NCBI GenBank assembly: GCA_020536535.1
Contig: JAHLWZ010000562.1
Coordinates: forward strand, 1 to 64,000
Reading direction: 5' to 3'
Length of the DNA stretch: 64,000 bases
From: Pelomyxa schiedti
Lineage: Eukaryota; Protista; Evosea
Positions 52,252 through 57,044 of this stretch are shown one piece after another. The position numbers and the translations under genes were made by a program. The notes under the pieces were generated by a model. The model was not told the DNA's origin, did no database searches, and worked only from the letters and a program-made list of their open reading frames with translations. Within the stretch, counting starts at the first letter, position 1. The number at the start of each line of letters is the position of its first letter.

Positions 52252-55200
52252 ATGGCAGACGAAGTGCAATCAATTATCATTGACAATAGTAGCTGGATGA
52301 TGAAGGTGAATAATATATGTATAACTATGACTTGTATTTGTGAATCCAACCTTAAAGTACTGTAGGCAGGCTTTGGTGGGGATGATGCTCCCAGGGCAGT
52401 GTTTCCTGTAGGCAGTCCCTTCTTAGTGCAATAAATGATGTGGGGTTCGAATGACATTCAGTAACCGTTATTAGTCAATCGTGGGCAGGCCCAGGCACAC
52501 TGGTGTGATGGCGGGAATGGGCAATAAGGATTCCTATGTTGGTGATGAGGCACAGTCAAAGAGAGGCATTCTAACTCTCAAATACCCTATCGAACATGGA
52601 GTGGTTACTGTAAGTTACTTTTGTCCTACATATCGATAGAAGGGAGCCTGACAATTATACAAAACAAATAGAACTGGGATGATATGGAAAAAATATGGCA
52701 CCACACCTTTTATAATGAGCTTCGAGTGGCCCCTGAGGGTACCTTTCCTCCTTTTTGTTGTATACCATAAGTAACCCTTGACAGAACACCCTGTATTGCA
52801 TTCTGAGGTACACTAAGTTTCTATGCCTCATACAGCCGTTATCTCACCTTACGTTCAGGTTCCCTTGAATCCAAAAGCCAATAGAGAGGTGTTTAATCTC
52901 CCTTTATGACCAATGTGAGAAGTTTACCTTTATTTTCTCACAGAAAATGATACAACTTATGTTCGAGACGTTCAACAGCCCTGCTGTATATGTGTCTCAG
53001 AACCCAGTTCTTTCGGTATCTTTTTTGTACTTTTTCCGGTTAGTAACTTTTCCCTCCAAGCTTTATAGTGCAGGCCGTACAACAGGATGTGTTATTGATA
53101 TAGGTGATGGGGTGACCCACGCCTGCAGTATTTATGAAGGGTTTTTAACCCCTCAGGCAACCAGAAGGTTAGACCTTGCTGGCCGAGATCTCACAGACTA
53201 CCTTATGCGTATACTCACTGAGAGGGGGTACTCCTTCACAACTACAGGTTTCCCACTTGACATTACTATGTCTAACAAATTACAAAGCTGAGAGAGAAAT
53301 TGTGCGGGATATTAAAGAAAGGCATTGCTTTGTAGCAGATAATTTCGAGCTTCAAATGCAACAATTTACTGCGTCACGTTCAAGGGACCAGACCTATGAA
53401 CTTCCTGACGGGCAAATTATTACTTTGGGGAATGAGGCATTTCGGTGTCCCGAAGCCCTTTTCCAACCATACTTTCTTGGCATGGAAGCTGCTGGTCTGC
53501 ACGAGAGCACCTATAATTGCATTATGGCCTCCCCAGAAGAGCTGAGAGCAGATCTTTGGAGCAATATCATACTCTCTGGTGGAAGCTCCCTATTCCGCGG
53601 AATTGAGACCAGAATACATAAAGTAAGGATTTTACCAATCAAAATTAAGCTTAACTTAAAACGCCAAATGCAGGAAATGACCGCACTTGCCCCAGTAACA
53701 GCCGCACTAAGGGTAATTGCACCACCTGAGAGAAAATATAGTGCCTGGATAGGAGGTTCTATTCTTGGTTCGTTGAGTACGTTCCAGCAGATGTGGATGT
53801 CCAAAGAAGAGTAAGCCTTTAGATTTACTTTTAACAGCAGGAATACATCTCATTAAATACCACAGATATGACGAATCTGGTCCTGCAATAGTACACAGAA
53901 AATGTTTTGCAGGTGTGGGAGAGGCTGCACCCCAGCAGGGTGTGGATTATGGAAAAGTATTTAAAGTTACACATGAAGCCCCTCTTCAAGTACGAGTGAG
54001 AATCCAAGAGAATGCTAAAAACTGTTCAGATTGATTATGAAGCAATCCAGAGGAAACAGGCAAACCGGCAACAACCAATTCATCACAGGATTATTTCCAC
54101 AAATGCGCTGCATGTGCAAGTCGGCAAACTTGTTAGTTCCAAAGTTGAAGAAGCAACCGGAGCTCCAACTGAGTGCAAAACCTGCGGTGCCTGTGTAAGC
54201 TTCTTAAGTCCCCTTCAACAGATTACAGGACAACAGTATGCTTCTTATTCTTCATCTTTCTAAAGGAGAAGTAAACCTTAGCAGTACTCAGATATTCACA
54301 TGAATGGACATGTGAGTTCTGCCACACACCCCAGCAAATCCTTTTAGATGAACACGAAATACCCACTGTCGCCAATATTGAATACTTTATCTCGGGTGGG
54401 AGCCTTGGGGTCTCTAACACACGGCCTATTGTTCTATTTTGCATTGATATTTCTGGGTAACTCATGAAGTAGAGGAGAGACTCCCCTCTGAAAAACCTGC
54501 AGGTCAATGGGAATTACGACAGAGGTATCTGGATCCGTTCAATTGCATGCCAAGGCTACAAAACGTTCTATTGATCCCGCACTCCAAGCCTTCACAGAGG
54601 GATCAAGTCAGTGGTTACCCCACCAGGCAAGAAATGTGTCTTATGTCAGTCGCATGGAATGCGTGCAGGTAATCTTCTTCATTTGTTTCACCTTTCCTCA
54701 CGTTTTCATATCATTGTCAAGGCGGGAGTGCACCAGCAGGTAGAAATTCATTTCATTGGTTGGTTAATTGATCCTGTAAAAGATTGAAGCAGTTGCACAG
54801 CGATACCCTCTTCATAGACTTTGTCTCATTACTTTCAATAATGAGGTTACCATCTATGGAGATGGCACCAAACCACCAGCTATCCTCACAGGATTCAATC
54901 TAGACGATATGTGAGATTTATTCCCTCCTTCCTCCAAAAATGTGAGATGTTTTAGGGATCACTTATTTCAGTCTGGAGTGAAATACACTGGTTGCCAGGC
55001 TTCAGCTAAGGACTGCTGTGATGCACTCATAGACCGGGTGTACTCCCTGTCAGAAACAGGCCCAACTGCCCTTGGCCCTGCAGTAGCTTGTGCAGTGGGT
55101 ATTACTTCTATGGCGCCTGGGTCAAAGGTACATTCCAACGATCGCAATTCTCCTGTTTACTATTTTTTTAGATTGTTGTTTGCACTGATGGCATTGCTAA

Positions 55201-57044
55201 CGTTGGGGTTGGCTCGTTGGATTCGAAGGATAAGGCTCAATTGCTAGCTTCTGCCACGTTTTACACCGGCTTAGCAACACAAGCACGCTCGTCTGGAACA
55301 ACAATAAGTGTGGTATGGTTGCAATCCTCAAGGATTTCTGTTGATCATCTATTTTCTCAGCTGTCAATCCGAGGTGACGACTGTTCTATGGAAAATTTGG
55401 GAACTTTGGCTGATGTAACAAATGGTACTGTAGACATTGTGGATCCTCTGGTAATTTGGCCTCTTTTTATCAATTTGTTCATTTTAAGTGAAGAAACTTA
55501 CGGAGAGCATCATATCTGCACTCAACCAACCAATAGTAGCAACAGAGGTGTCTTGCTGTCTGTATTTCCCTGGGATGCCCCAACCAGAGGAACCTGCCAC
55601 CCCCACTGCTTCAATAACCACTTCTACAACCGCATCCACAACAACAACCGCATCTTCCTCGACCAGCTTACGTAGGTCTTTAACAAGCAGCACACCAGCG
55701 CGACCACAGAACCCAAACACCAAGGACCTCGGTTCTGTAACAGCGTCCTCAGAGGCGTCATTTCCGTTTGAGTGTGACGACGAAATAACTGTGGCACAAG
55801 TGCCACTGCAATTGCAGGTTTCCTTCCCATTTTTCGTATCGAAGTCACTTTCATCCAGCTCCGCTATTCTTTACCAAACGGGAACAAACTTCTTCGTACC
55901 TTTACTGAACGGTGTGACCTCACAGATGATTACCCTTACTAATCTACCTAGGTTGCCCTTAATTACTGATCAGAATGTCACTGAAGGAATGTGTCTTCCT
56001 TGGGTAGTTGCACTAGCTTGCATTCATAGTACAGCTCGTATGGCTCAGCTTGGAAAGTATCAAGTAATAACAAGAGATGCTTTCTCAAAATAAACTAATT
56101 CATTCAACAGGAGGCAAGACTACAACTTATTTCGTGCCAAAGATTACTCCAGCGCTGCATGAAGACAAGTGCTCACCAAAAAACTTATGTGAACTTCATA
56201 ACTGAGGGTGAAAGACTGGACTCATTTATGAGGGAACAACAACAGCAAGAGGAGATTTTTTCTTTGGAAGGGGAACAAAATGTATGAGCTTGTAAAAGAC
56301 CCCTTCATTTCTAATTTAATTAGGAGAGGGAGCAGCTGCAGGAAAGGAGGATGGTGCGTGACGATACAGCAGCACGCAATATTGTTCAAATGAAAACTTT
56401 GCCTGCTTCAGCTCTTTCGGGAACACCAACAGGCAACATGACTCTTTCACATAATGCCTTCCTTGCTTGTGCTGATTTCCACACTGAAATGGTATTTCTT
56501 GTACTTCGCTCTATCACTTTGACTTAATTCTTTGTAGATATATAATGATGAAATAGAAGATGGATTGGCCGCTTGTGCCAAAGAGCAGGCTGCAGTGTGG
56601 GCTCAAGCAGCAACAGAGGGAACTGATGTTCCTGTAGATAGGTACTCTAAAATTTCGTTTCGATTTTGTAACCACTACTCAGGGAATTTTTACGCACACT
56701 CGTTCGCCTTGGAAGTGAAATAGAAGGCAGGAAAAGTGAACGACGTGCACAGCCAAAAGATGACCACCGCAGAACTGAAAAAGTGACTCCCACCTCCGAA
56801 AAAAAAAAAAAAAAAAAAAAAAACAAAAAACCCAACATTTATACCAACCAAAATCAACCTATAGTTACGGGATATGCAAAGGCAGAGAGAACAGGCAGAA
56901 GTGGATGCAATGCACAAGCGAAGAACAGTAAACAAGCAAGAATCAGCCTCTAGCTCCACTCTTCAGGATGCACTCAGGTACCTACCTGACACGGCTCAGC
57001 AACAGGCACAGCTACTCCAAGGAATTAAGAAGTCCTCTTCGTAG
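52252..57044 (+). CDS. Divergent actin fused in frame to a Sec23/24-type zinc finger + vWA domain (Cpras1-type) and a charged C-terminal tail
   Basis: Actin: [82 protein letters not shown] with no stop after CF (TTT GCA GGT). Then CKTCGAC...[14 protein letters not shown]|[19 protein letters not shown] and [11 protein letters not shown]. Confidence 0.87.

What the first reader, a model, noticed from the sequence alone, without database searches (positions are those of the whole stretch)
52252..57044. Actin fused to a Sec23/24-type zinc finger and a Cpras-type vWA domain
The actin C-terminus HRKCF is followed by GCA instead of a stop (53909). It continues by canonical splicing into CKTC...CEFC and a vWA with intact DISGS MIDAS, including an 18-nt microexon (54722-54739). 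This ZnF-vWA module is the one that accompanies the permuted Ras in Dictyostelium Cpras1 and is related to COPII Sec23/24 (established). Known actin fusions such as filactin put actin at the C-terminus. An N-terminal actin with a ~700-aa extension would mask the C-terminal/barbed-end region. It may be an actin-fold adaptor linking filaments to membrane or GTPase machinery (inference). I know no described protein with this architecture.
Basis: partly seen in the sequence, partly recalled or inferred. Interest (0 to 1): 0.8.

Follow-up and report, generated by a model that had tools for sequence, protein, structure and literature searches.

The report
Actin fused to Sec23/24-like adaptor
This is a real gene of the anaerobic amoeba Pelomyxa schiedti that joins a near-normal actin to a COPII-like (Sec23/24-type) zinc-finger/vWA adaptor; it belongs to an apparently undescribed protein family found across amoebae, and here one of its modules has moved from the front of the protein to the back.

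Summary
A hand-built model (27 exons, 26 GT-AG introns of 40-82 nt, 52252-57044, 1167 aa) is 100% identical to the GenBank protein "actin 11 [Pelomyxa schiedti]". Single-cell RNA contigs confirm 10 introns, but not the key 40-nt intron 53990-54029. The fusion rests instead on 40 homologous proteins that carry actin plus ZnF-vWA in one chain. They include Trinity transcripts from Arcella, Pyxidicula, Copromyxa and Mastigella, annotated genes of Balamuthia and Mastigamoeba, and two intron-free single ORFs.

Their vWA modules form one clade (support 100), so the fusion arose once. The C-terminal part folds like Sec23/Sec24 (Foldseek E 1e-17) but lacks the gelsolin domain and has an invariant MIDAS. 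Across the family, actin's filament-contact residues are kept (79-89%), while the catalytic and phosphate-release residues are lost (Q137 14%, D154 7%).

New here: most members start with a conserved N-terminal module. In Pelomyxa that module sits after the natural C-terminus, and its ancestral start Met is now internal (M1023). RNA confirms this circular-permutation-like rearrangement.

No paper describing the family was found. Function is inferred: a weakly or non-hydrolysing actin protomer tethering a Sec23/24-like adaptor to filaments. Earlier notes of this scan on this genome list other actin and vWA fusions, not this family.

The parts
52252..57044 (+). Whole coding region: 27 exons, 26 GT-AG introns (40-82 nt), 1167 aa
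   Evidence: Model built. It is identical to P0234 'actin 11 [Pelomyxa schiedti]'. Ten introns are seen in RNA contigs.
52252..53908 (+). Actin domain (aa 1-375, exons 1-11 in part). P-loop 1 reads DNSSW (G13S, G15W) and Q137 is N; D154 and H161 are kept.
   Evidence: Pfam Actin 439 bits over aa 3-375. 75-76% identity to conventional actins, including Pelomyxa palustris actin. Residue analysis.
53909..53989 (+). First part of the linker (aa 376-402), read straight on from HRKCF. It contains VDYGKVFKV, shared with the Balamuthia orthologue (VDYAKIFDI).
   Evidence: RNA contig X1-1 runs through the CF codon to 53977. AF2 predicts disorder for 378-404.
53990..54029 (+). Intron 11 (40 nt, GTACGA..TTCAG), the junction that makes the fusion. 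If unspliced, the actin frame stops at TGA 54032-34.
   Evidence: No RNA contig covers it. Another 40-nt intron (53248-53287) lies in the actin part. The GenBank model uses the same junction.
54174..54322 (+). Four-cysteine zinc finger (C451, C454, C478, C481; CKTC...CEFC), split by intron 12
   Evidence: The four Cys are at least 90% conserved in 53 sequences. Pfam zf-Sec23_Sec24 is weak here (16.6 bits) but above cut-off in homologues P0012, P0248 and P0151. Intron 12 is seen in RNA.
54428..55526 (+). vWA / Sec23-trunk domain (aa ~517-775) with the MIDAS residues D523-x-S525-x-S527, T667 and D693
   Evidence: Pfam Sec23_trunk 36.8 bits against a cut-off of 27. The MIDAS residues are invariant in A1. 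AF2 pLDDT is above 90.
54722..54739 (+). 18-nt microexon encoding AGVHQQ (aa 582-587)
   Evidence: It aligns with the family consensus AAVxxQ without a gap. There is no RNA coverage here.
55533..55958 (+). Beta-sandwich domain (aa ~778-892) with a disordered Thr/Ser-rich insert (aa ~796-838)
   Evidence: AF2 strands and a low-pLDDT stretch at 810-835. The Foldseek alignment to Sec23/24 spans about 660 columns. Sec23_BS hits occur in homologues.
55970..56419 (+). Helical domain (aa ~897-1016), ending in the family's natural C-terminal motif RDDxAxxNIVQMK
   Evidence: AF2 helices. Homologues stop 8-20 aa after QMK.
56438..57044 (+). Relocated family module (aa 1023-1167; conserved core ~56438-56713). 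In 23 other members it is the N-terminus. The ATG at 56438 aligns with their start codon.
   Evidence: phmmer and tblastn. Alignments. RNA contigs X1-3 and X3-8 join it by splicing to the helical-domain exons.
57045..57098 (+). 3' untranslated end, as far as RNA shows it
   Evidence: RNA contig X1-3 reaches 57098.

Best explanation
Shown: 52252-57044 is one spliced gene of Pelomyxa schiedti. It encodes a 1167-aa chain made of an actin domain, a disordered linker of about 65 aa, a four-Cys zinc finger, a MIDAS vWA (Sec23 trunk) domain, a beta-sandwich, a helical domain and a family-specific helical module. It belongs to a family whose named members are all Amoebozoa (Archamoebae, Tubulinea, Discosea). 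The fusion arose once, inside the CPRas-type ZnF-vWA family, where other members carry Ras or cpRas in actin's place.

The Pelomyxa protein is a permuted variant. The module that opens the protein in other members now follows the natural C-terminus, with the ancestral start Met kept as M1023.

Inferred origin: a head-to-tail tandem duplication, followed by loss of the first N-module and of everything after the second one.

Inferred mechanism: the actin domain keeps the filament-contact and adenosine-pocket residues but has lost the hydrolysis and phosphate-release residues family-wide. It therefore most likely acts as a weakly or non-hydrolysing actin protomer that docks on, or co-assembles with, conventional F-actin. 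Both its termini lie on subdomain 1, at the filament surface. Through the flexible linker it would display the Sec23/24-like adaptor, whose MIDAS and zinc finger bind a still unknown protein or membrane partner.
For: Gene model:
- The model equals the GenBank protein, and 10 introns are seen in RNA.

The fusion is real and old:
- 40 proteins hold both actin and ZnF-vWA.
- They include Trinity transcripts of Arcella intermedia, Pyxidicula operculata (two), Copromyxa protea and Mastigella eilhardi (two), plus genes of Balamuthia mandrillaris and Mastigamoeba balamuthi.
- P0098 (gene 2801-7084, 4284 nt) and P0245 (3001-6603, 3603 nt) are single uninterrupted ORFs.

Single origin:
- All 28 fusion vWA modules, plus 6 short proteins (four clearly truncated), form one clade with support 100.
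- An AU test does not reject one clade for the actin domains (p 0.458).

Sec23/24-like module:
- AF2 model with pLDDT 83.5 and pTM 0.75.
- Foldseek places Sec23 and Sec24 first (E 1.5e-17, about 660 columns).
- The MIDAS DxSxS/T/D is invariant and the four Cys are at least 90% conserved.

Actin surfaces (share of other fusions keeping the conventional residue):
- D-loop 0.89, other longitudinal contacts 0.87, cleft and C-terminus 0.86, lateral contacts 0.79.
- K213, E214 and K336 at 0.93-0.96.
- Q137 0.14, D154 0.07, H161 0.43, R177 0.25, G15 0.36.

Flexible tether:
- Residues 378-404 have pLDDT below 50 and the whole-chain pTM is 0.60.
- Linkers in the family are 65-135 aa and low in complexity.

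Permutation:
- locate and align the module.
- RNA contigs from two runs cross the junction inside exon 24.
Against: - No RNA contig spans intron 11 itself.
- No binding, polymerisation or localisation data exist for any member.
- G13S and G15W in this protein's phosphate loop could abolish nucleotide binding and destabilise the fold.
- C-terminal extensions of actin are known to disturb profilin- and formin-dependent assembly (general knowledge).
- The actin tree is poorly resolved and places this actin beside Pelomyxa palustris conventional actin (SH-aLRT 88). Of 8 weak family signature positions, this actin has the fusion-type residue at none.
- The duplication route to the permutation is inferred from the end-to-start junction only. 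No second copy or remnant lies in the window.
Confidence: 0.6

Rival explanations
1. The actin domain does not join filaments. It is a cis-regulatory pseudo-ATPase 'switch' that takes the place of the Ras/cpRas GTPase of sister proteins and controls the Sec23/24-like module within the same chain, as Sar1 does for Sec23.
For: Sister proteins of the same ZnF-vWA family carry Ras at the same N-terminal position: 12 in my set and 11 of the 120 best hits. The catalytic residues are degenerate. The family-specific module could close the chain into a ring, since it tolerates being moved from one end to the other.
Against: Filament-contact surfaces are kept at 79-89%, as high as or higher than the rest of the domain (0.78). 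A purely internal switch would not need that. AF2 predicts no fixed actin/vWA interface (pTM 0.60, disordered linker). The gelsolin domain, which in Sec23 helps bind Sar1, is absent.
Confidence: 0.2
2. The actin (like Ras in sister proteins) is an integrated bait. The protein would be a conflict or immunity sensor that reports modification of actin by bacterial toxins through the vWA module.
For: Actin and Ras are both classical toxin targets (general knowledge). Some family members carry the ADP-ribose-reader domains WWE (P0098, P0353) or PF18102 (P0311, P0320). Toxin-target residues K50 (1.00), E270 (0.93) and T148 (0.86) are kept. Unchecked notes of this scan report vWA scaffolds with host-like inserts in the same genome; these are leads only.
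Against: R177, the main ADP-ribosylation site, is kept in only 25% of the fusions and is absent in the WWE-bearing P0098. The gene is old, with one or two copies in the species seen so far, rather than expanded and fast-evolving. No effector domain was recognised in the Pelomyxa protein.
Confidence: 0.1
3. These are two neighbouring genes wrongly joined: an actin with a 46-aa tail that ends at TGA 54032-34, and a separate ZnF-vWA gene starting at the in-frame ATG near 54012.
For: Unspliced, the actin frame does reach a stop, and an in-frame ATG exists. The RNA contigs break exactly in this interval, at 53977 and 54034.
Against: 40 homologues carry both halves in one chain, six of them transcripts and two of them intron-free ORFs. 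Family-specific sequence is conserved on both sides of the junction. There would be no intergenic space or promoter. No template-switch-oligo 5' end is seen at 54034, although such ends were seen elsewhere. The GenBank model is the same as mine.
Confidence: 0.03

Closest known systems
CPRas-type ZnF-VWA proteins (Dictyostelium CPRas1 and relatives; Elias and Novotny 2008, PMC2430557)
   Same: They share the C-terminal half: a four-Cys zinc finger upstream of a VWA / Sec23-trunk domain. Proteins named 'circularly permutated Ras protein 1-like' hit at E 1e-83 to 1e-50 and 28-33% identity. P. schiedti also has its own 'circularly permutated Ras protein 1' (P0352).
   Different: The N-terminal partner is an actin, not a (permuted) Ras GTPase. 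The actin fusions form their own clade and carry an extra family-specific module. The 2008 paper does not mention actin.
COPII inner-coat subunits Sec23 and Sec24
   Same: The order of domains and the fold match: zinc finger, trunk, beta-sandwich, helical. Foldseek gives E 1e-17 to 1e-14 over about 650-700 columns. Pfam Sec23_trunk scores above its cut-off.
   Different: About 12% identity. There is no gelsolin-like domain. The MIDAS is intact and invariant. There is no evidence for Sar1 binding or coat formation.
Filactin (Dictyostelium, Physarum)
   Same: It is a bona fide, highly conserved actin domain inside a much longer amoebozoan protein (PMC2441452, PMC4758236).
   Different: Filactin has a long N-terminal extension and ends with the actin. 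Here the large extension is C-terminal and of Sec23/24 type. No similarity outside actin was seen.
Conventional actin (for example Pelomyxa palustris actin, P0446)
   Same: 75-76% identity and full-length Pfam coverage. The D-loop, hydrophobic plug, target cleft and HRKCF end are conserved.
   Different: G13S, G15W and Q137N. The chain does not end at F375. Across the family the hydrolysis and phosphate-release residues are lost.
Archaeal ArnA/ArnB (ZnF + vWA 'Sec23/24 core motif', PDB 8s05)
   Same: It is a zinc-finger plus vWA core, found by Foldseek at E 7e-9.
   Different: It is much shorter and is a separate two-protein complex. It has no actin and no beta-sandwich or helical extension of this size.

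Membership tests
Actin (Pfam PF00022, conventional-actin type) | Full-length match to the actin profile | tested here: met
   439 bits, aa 3-375 against profile positions 2-410.
Actin (Pfam PF00022, conventional-actin type) | Phosphate-1 loop DNGSG and catalytic Q137 | tested here: not met
   The loop reads DNSSW and position 137 is N. In the family Q137 is kept in 14% and G15 in 36%.
Actin (Pfam PF00022, conventional-actin type) | Chain ends at F375 | tested here: not met
   GCA follows TTT at 53909, and 792 further residues follow.
Actin (Pfam PF00022, conventional-actin type) | Polymerises into filaments | not testable with these tools
   Only residue conservation at the contact surfaces could be measured (0.79-0.89).
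Sec23/Sec24 (COPII inner coat) | Zinc finger + trunk + beta-sandwich + helical domains, in that order | tested here: met
   Foldseek to 1m2v, 5vng, 3egd and others at E about 1e-17 over about 660 columns. Pfam trunk 36.8 bits.
Sec23/Sec24 (COPII inner coat) | C-terminal gelsolin-like domain | tested here: not met
   After the helical domain the model has only helices. Homologues end 8-20 aa after the helical domain.
Sec23/Sec24 (COPII inner coat) | Binds Sar1 and assembles a coat | not testable with these tools
   No test was possible.
CPRas-type ZnF-VWA family (PMC2430557) | Four conserved cysteines upstream of a VWA/Sec23-trunk domain, with sequence kinship to CPRas1-like proteins | tested here: met
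   C451, C454, C478 and C481 are at least 90% conserved. Hits named CPRas1-like reach E 1e-83.
CPRas-type ZnF-VWA family (PMC2430557) | N-terminal cpRAS GTPase domain | tested here: not met
   Pfam finds Actin and no Ras.
MIDAS-type vWA domains | DxSxS ... T ... D metal-site motif | tested here: met
   D523, S525, S527, T667 and D693 are invariant in 53 sequences.
Actin-ZnF-vWA fusion family (defined here) | Actin and ZnF-vWA in one chain, with the vWA inside the fusion clade | tested here: met
Actin-ZnF-vWA fusion family (defined here) | Family module (M-x-F-x-S ... DGIAxCAxEQAxxW ... RLQPRFQKGK) at the N-terminus | tested here: not met
   The module is present, but at aa 1023-1167, after the natural C-terminus.
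Filactin | Actin at the C-terminus behind a long N-terminal extension | tested here: not met
   Here the actin starts at residue 1.

The most novel reading that the evidence does not exclude
Amoebae have an old, dedicated class of actin protomers that probably still bind nucleotide but have lost the hydrolysis residues. These would build a COPII-like (Sec23/24-type) MIDAS adaptor directly into or onto actin filaments. That would be a direct, covalent link between the actin cytoskeleton and a coat-like cargo or membrane adaptor, in the same slot where sister proteins use a Ras GTPase. On this reading, actin assembly state substitutes for a GTPase switch.
Probability: 0.15. Interest if true: 0.8.

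Novelty: new variant of a known kind. Interest (0 to 1): 0.62.

Why it matters
Actin is almost never tolerated with a large C-terminal fusion. Yet this fusion has been kept since early in amoebozoan evolution: it is found in Archamoebae, Tubulinea and Discosea. Selection has acted on the filament-contact surfaces but not on ATP hydrolysis. That makes the family a natural experiment on what an actin protomer can do without its ATPase cycle.

It is also a candidate direct bridge between filaments and a Sec23/24-like adaptor. It widens the CPRas-type ZnF-vWA family, whose function is unknown, by showing that Ras and actin are interchangeable partners. The Pelomyxa gene adds a clean, RNA-verified natural case of a circular-permutation-like rearrangement in a multidomain eukaryotic protein, with the old start codon still visible inside the chain.

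Database annotation as plain 'actin' hides all of this.

Tried and rejected
1. Pfam on single exons found only Actin. The vWA and ZnF exons are too short. This was solved by finding the full public protein.

3. Recent replacement or gene conversion of the actin domain by a conventional actin.
- Considered because this actin is 75-76% identical to conventional actins but at most 64.5% to other fusions, sits beside Pelomyxa palustris actin in the tree (88, unstarred), and has none of the 8 weak family signatures.
- Not adopted, because it shares G13S (DNSS), L105H and the post-actin VDYxKxF motif with its closest vWA relative, Balamuthia P0231, and the AU test does not reject one clade.
- It remains possible.

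4. Searches for kin of the family module found nothing credible. These were Pfam on whole proteins, a profile search against PDB sequences (best E 0.58) and ESM Atlas features (best score 0.58).

5. A second copy or remnant of actin, vWA or the module elsewhere in the window: none was found.

6. The Toxoplasma preconoidal-ring chains among the Foldseek hits turned out to be the genuine SEC23/SEC24 moonlighting there (PMC12819142). They are not a related paralogue family.

7. Literature searches and readings found no description of an actin-ZnF-vWA protein.
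Full report
**1. What is in the sequence**

The window is intron-rich eukaryotic DNA of about 45% G+C. I started at the ATG at 52252 and followed open frames and GT-AG sites. This gave a model of 27 exons and 26 introns (40-82 nt) that ends at the stop at 57042-57044 and encodes 1167 aa.

- The actin frame reads ...HRKCF (TTT 53906-08) and goes straight on with GCA at 53909.
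- After 27 more codons, a 40-nt intron (53990-54029, GTACGA..TTCAG) leads into the exon with CKTC.
- The next exon carries CEFC and the start of DISGS.
- The 18-nt exon 54722-54739 encodes AGVHQQ.

If intron 11 is left unspliced, the actin frame stops at TGA 54032-34, and an in-frame ATG near 54012 could open a separate gene. I kept that as the main rival.

**2. Identity of the gene and the organism**

I therefore searched with one in-frame stretch, 55172-55450, which reads through a 48-nt stop-free intron, against 1.8 billion representatives.

- Among 360 hits, several carried an actin part in front of the vWA.
- One cluster held a 1057-aa Arcella intermedia transcript with Actin, zf-Sec23_Sec24 and Sec23_BS.
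- Searching with that protein returned P0234, 'actin 11 [Pelomyxa schiedti]', 1167 aa.
- P0234 is identical to my model at all 1167 positions.

So the window is P. schiedti. This fits the single-cell 'protist metagenome' RNA runs found for it and the published intron density of 7.43 per gene (PMC8887013).

**3. RNA evidence**

Logan contigs of three single-cell RNA runs and one DNA run were laid on 51900-57300.

- They show ten of my introns as GT..AG joints or adjacent pieces: introns 6, 7, 10, 12, 20, 22, 23, 24, 25 and 26.
- A 9-letter loose end fits intron 4.
- One RNA contig runs from actin exon 10 across intron 10 and through the CF codon to 53977.
- The next contig starts at 54034 and is spliced on into the CEFC exon.
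- The 56 bases between them, which include intron 11, are uncovered at depths of 3.7-6. The decisive junction is therefore not shown by RNA.
- No template-switch-oligo 5' end lies at 54034, although such ends were seen at 53683 and 56027.
- One contig of run X3 (55713-55981) keeps introns 20 and 21. This is unspliced RNA or DNA carry-over.

**4. The fusion is real because it is conserved**

With local phmmer I found 40 proteins that hold both an actin part and the ZnF-vWA. Named members are:

- Trinity transcripts of Arcella intermedia, Pyxidicula operculata (two), Copromyxa protea and Mastigella eilhardi (two).
- 'actin [Balamuthia mandrillaris]' and a Mastigamoeba balamuthi 'putative actin'.
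- Many proteins from metagenome contigs.

Two members sit on contigs as single uninterrupted ORFs: P0098 (4284 nt) and P0245 (3603 nt). No splicing choice can have created those fusions.

Around the Pelomyxa junction, both sides are family sequence. VDYGKVFKV after the actin matches VDYAKIFDI in Balamuthia. The stretch before the zinc finger matches the family consensus ..DTN....L. I put the two-gene rival at about 3%.

**5. Anatomy of the C-terminal part**

An alignment of 53 sequences shows the MIDAS residues (D523, S525, S527, T667, D693) invariant and the four zinc-finger cysteines at least 90% conserved.

AlphaFold2 on aa 430-1167 gave pLDDT 83.5 and pTM 0.75. The model contains a zinc finger, an alpha/beta vWA domain, a beta-sandwich with a disordered Thr/Ser-rich insert, a helical domain, and then long helices.

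Foldseek against the PDB puts Sec23 and Sec24 first, at E 1.5e-17 to 1e-14 with 650-700 aligned columns and about 12% identity. A bacterial vWA and the archaeal ArnAB 'Sec23/24 core' follow. The Toxoplasma ring chains among the hits are the true SEC23/24.

There is no gelsolin-like domain. Homologues end 8-20 residues after a conserved ...NIVQMK motif at the end of the helical domain. Sequence kinship is closest to proteins that NCBI names 'circularly permutated Ras protein 1-like' (E down to 1e-83). This is the ZnF-VWA family of Elias and Novotny (PMC2430557). Of the 120 best hits, 22 carry actin and 11 carry Ras.

**6. One origin**

In a tree of 149 vWA modules, all 28 actin-linked ones fall in one clade with support 100. 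Six short proteins fall with them; four are clearly truncated and two start with Met.

The actin tree is weak. 26 fusion actins group together (91), but the Pelomyxa one sits beside Pelomyxa palustris conventional actin (88, not starred). An AU test does not reject a single clade (p 0.458).

The Pelomyxa actin is unusually conservative: 75-76% identical to conventional actins and at most 64.5% to other fusion actins. It shares G13S, L105H and the post-actin motif with Balamuthia P0231, its nearest vWA relative. I therefore read it as slow evolution rather than replacement, but I cannot exclude gene conversion.

**7. What the actin domain has kept and lost**

I measured this at 281 positions that are at least 90% invariant in 19 conventional actins. 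The figures give the share of the other 28 fusions that keep the conventional residue.

| Class or residue | Share kept |
|---|---|
| D-loop | 0.89 |
| Other longitudinal contacts | 0.87 |
| Hydrophobic cleft and C-terminus | 0.86 |
| Lateral contacts | 0.79 |
| All remaining positions | 0.78 |
| K213, E214, K336 (adenosine pocket) | 0.93-0.96 |
| Q137 | 0.14 |
| D154 | 0.07 |
| H161 | 0.43 |
| H73 | 0.46 |
| R177 | 0.25 |
| D179 | 0.32 |
| N12 | 0.11 |
| G15 | 0.36 |

The Pelomyxa protein itself keeps D154 and H161 but has G13S, G15W and Q137N.

The simplest reading is that nucleotide binding and actin-actin, or actin-partner, contacts are under selection while ATP hydrolysis and phosphate release are not. 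This is an inference from conservation, drawing on established actin structure-function knowledge.

**8. Linker and overall shape**

The full-length AlphaFold2 model has pLDDT 82.6 but pTM only 0.60. Residues 378-404 are below 50. Family linkers are 65-135 aa and low in complexity. Nothing suggests that the extension docks on the barbed-end face. It looks like a flexible tether leaving subdomain 1, which lies on the outside of a filament (general knowledge).

**9. A rearrangement specific to Pelomyxa**

The last 145 residues of the Pelomyxa protein are homologous to the first ~120 residues of 23 other members. This module has the consensus M-x-F-x-S...E-x-I-Y-x-D-E-I-x-D-G-I-A-x-C-A-x-E-Q-A-x-x-W...F-V-x-x-L-L...R-L-Q-P-R-F-Q-K-G-K. 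In my set it occurs only in actin fusions.

- In Pelomyxa the module begins at M1023 (ATG 56438), which aligns with the start Met of the others.
- M1023 follows the family's natural C-terminal region (NIVQMK at 1003-1008) by 14 residues, about where the homologues' chains stop.
- No other copy of the module lies in the window. The protein starts directly with the actin.
- RNA contigs of two runs cross this junction and are spliced to the neighbouring exons, so it is not an amplification chimera.

I infer a head-to-tail duplication followed by loss of the outer parts, which is the classical route to circular permutation. The module has no detectable kin in Pfam, the PDB or the ESM Atlas.

**10. 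How it most likely works, and what is known**

I commit, at moderate confidence, to this reading. The protein is a weakly or non-hydrolysing actin protomer that binds or co-assembles with conventional actin, and that carries a Sec23/24-like MIDAS adaptor on a flexible tether.

The rivals are:

- A cis switch that replaces Ras (about 0.2).
- An integrated bait for toxins (about 0.1). WWE and PF18102 domains in some members speak for it, and the loss of R177 speaks against it.
- Mis-joined genes (about 0.03).

The searches and readings listed under Tried and rejected found filactin and the cpRAS paper, but no description of an actin-ZnF-vWA protein. The gene is in GenBank as 'actin 11' and its relatives are named 'actin', so the sequence is public but the family appears undescribed. 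I class it as a new variant of a known kind.

Noticed in passing
window 55713-55981: One RNA-library contig (run X3, depth 9.2) runs unspliced through introns 20 and 21, while run X2 shows intron 20 spliced. This is intron retention, pre-mRNA or DNA carry-over in the single-cell libraries.
   Followed up: partly
window 56031 to 56409: One RNA contig (run X2) skips 377 bases with non-canonical ends (CA..TT) and 6 shared letters at the joint. This looks like a template-switch or assembly artefact rather than splicing.
   Followed up: no
window 53683 and 56027: RNA contigs carry loose 5' letters ending in ...GAGTACATGGG, which resemble the end of a SMART-type template-switch oligo (recognised from memory). 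They mark internal cDNA 5' ends, so such ends are not transcription starts here.
   Followed up: no
P0098 (aa 145-173 and 1031-1088), P0259, P0353, P0311, P0320: A metagenomic, intron-free branch of the family carries a WW domain before the actin. Some members carry a WWE domain, inserted between parts of the Sec23/24-like module in P0098, or PF18102. This hints at a link to ADP-ribose signalling.
   Followed up: partly
P0352 (Pelomyxa schiedti, 1967 aa, elsewhere in the genome): The same genome encodes a protein named 'circularly permutated Ras protein 1' whose precomputed Pfam hits combine Ras, kinase, ankyrin repeats and this vWA. This is another partner set for the same adaptor.
   Followed up: no
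window 56789-56837: A long A-run inside intron 26 breaks the DNA contigs of the genome run (pieces end at 56788 and restart at 56838). The RNA contig nevertheless joins 56782 to 56865.
   Followed up: partly
L001 (GCA_040384145.1, JAWVHD010003418.1) 3001-6603: An unnamed NCBI assembly holds an intron-free 1200-aa member, next to a LIM protein and a BAR-RhoGEF-RhoGAP protein. The organism was not identified.
   Followed up: no
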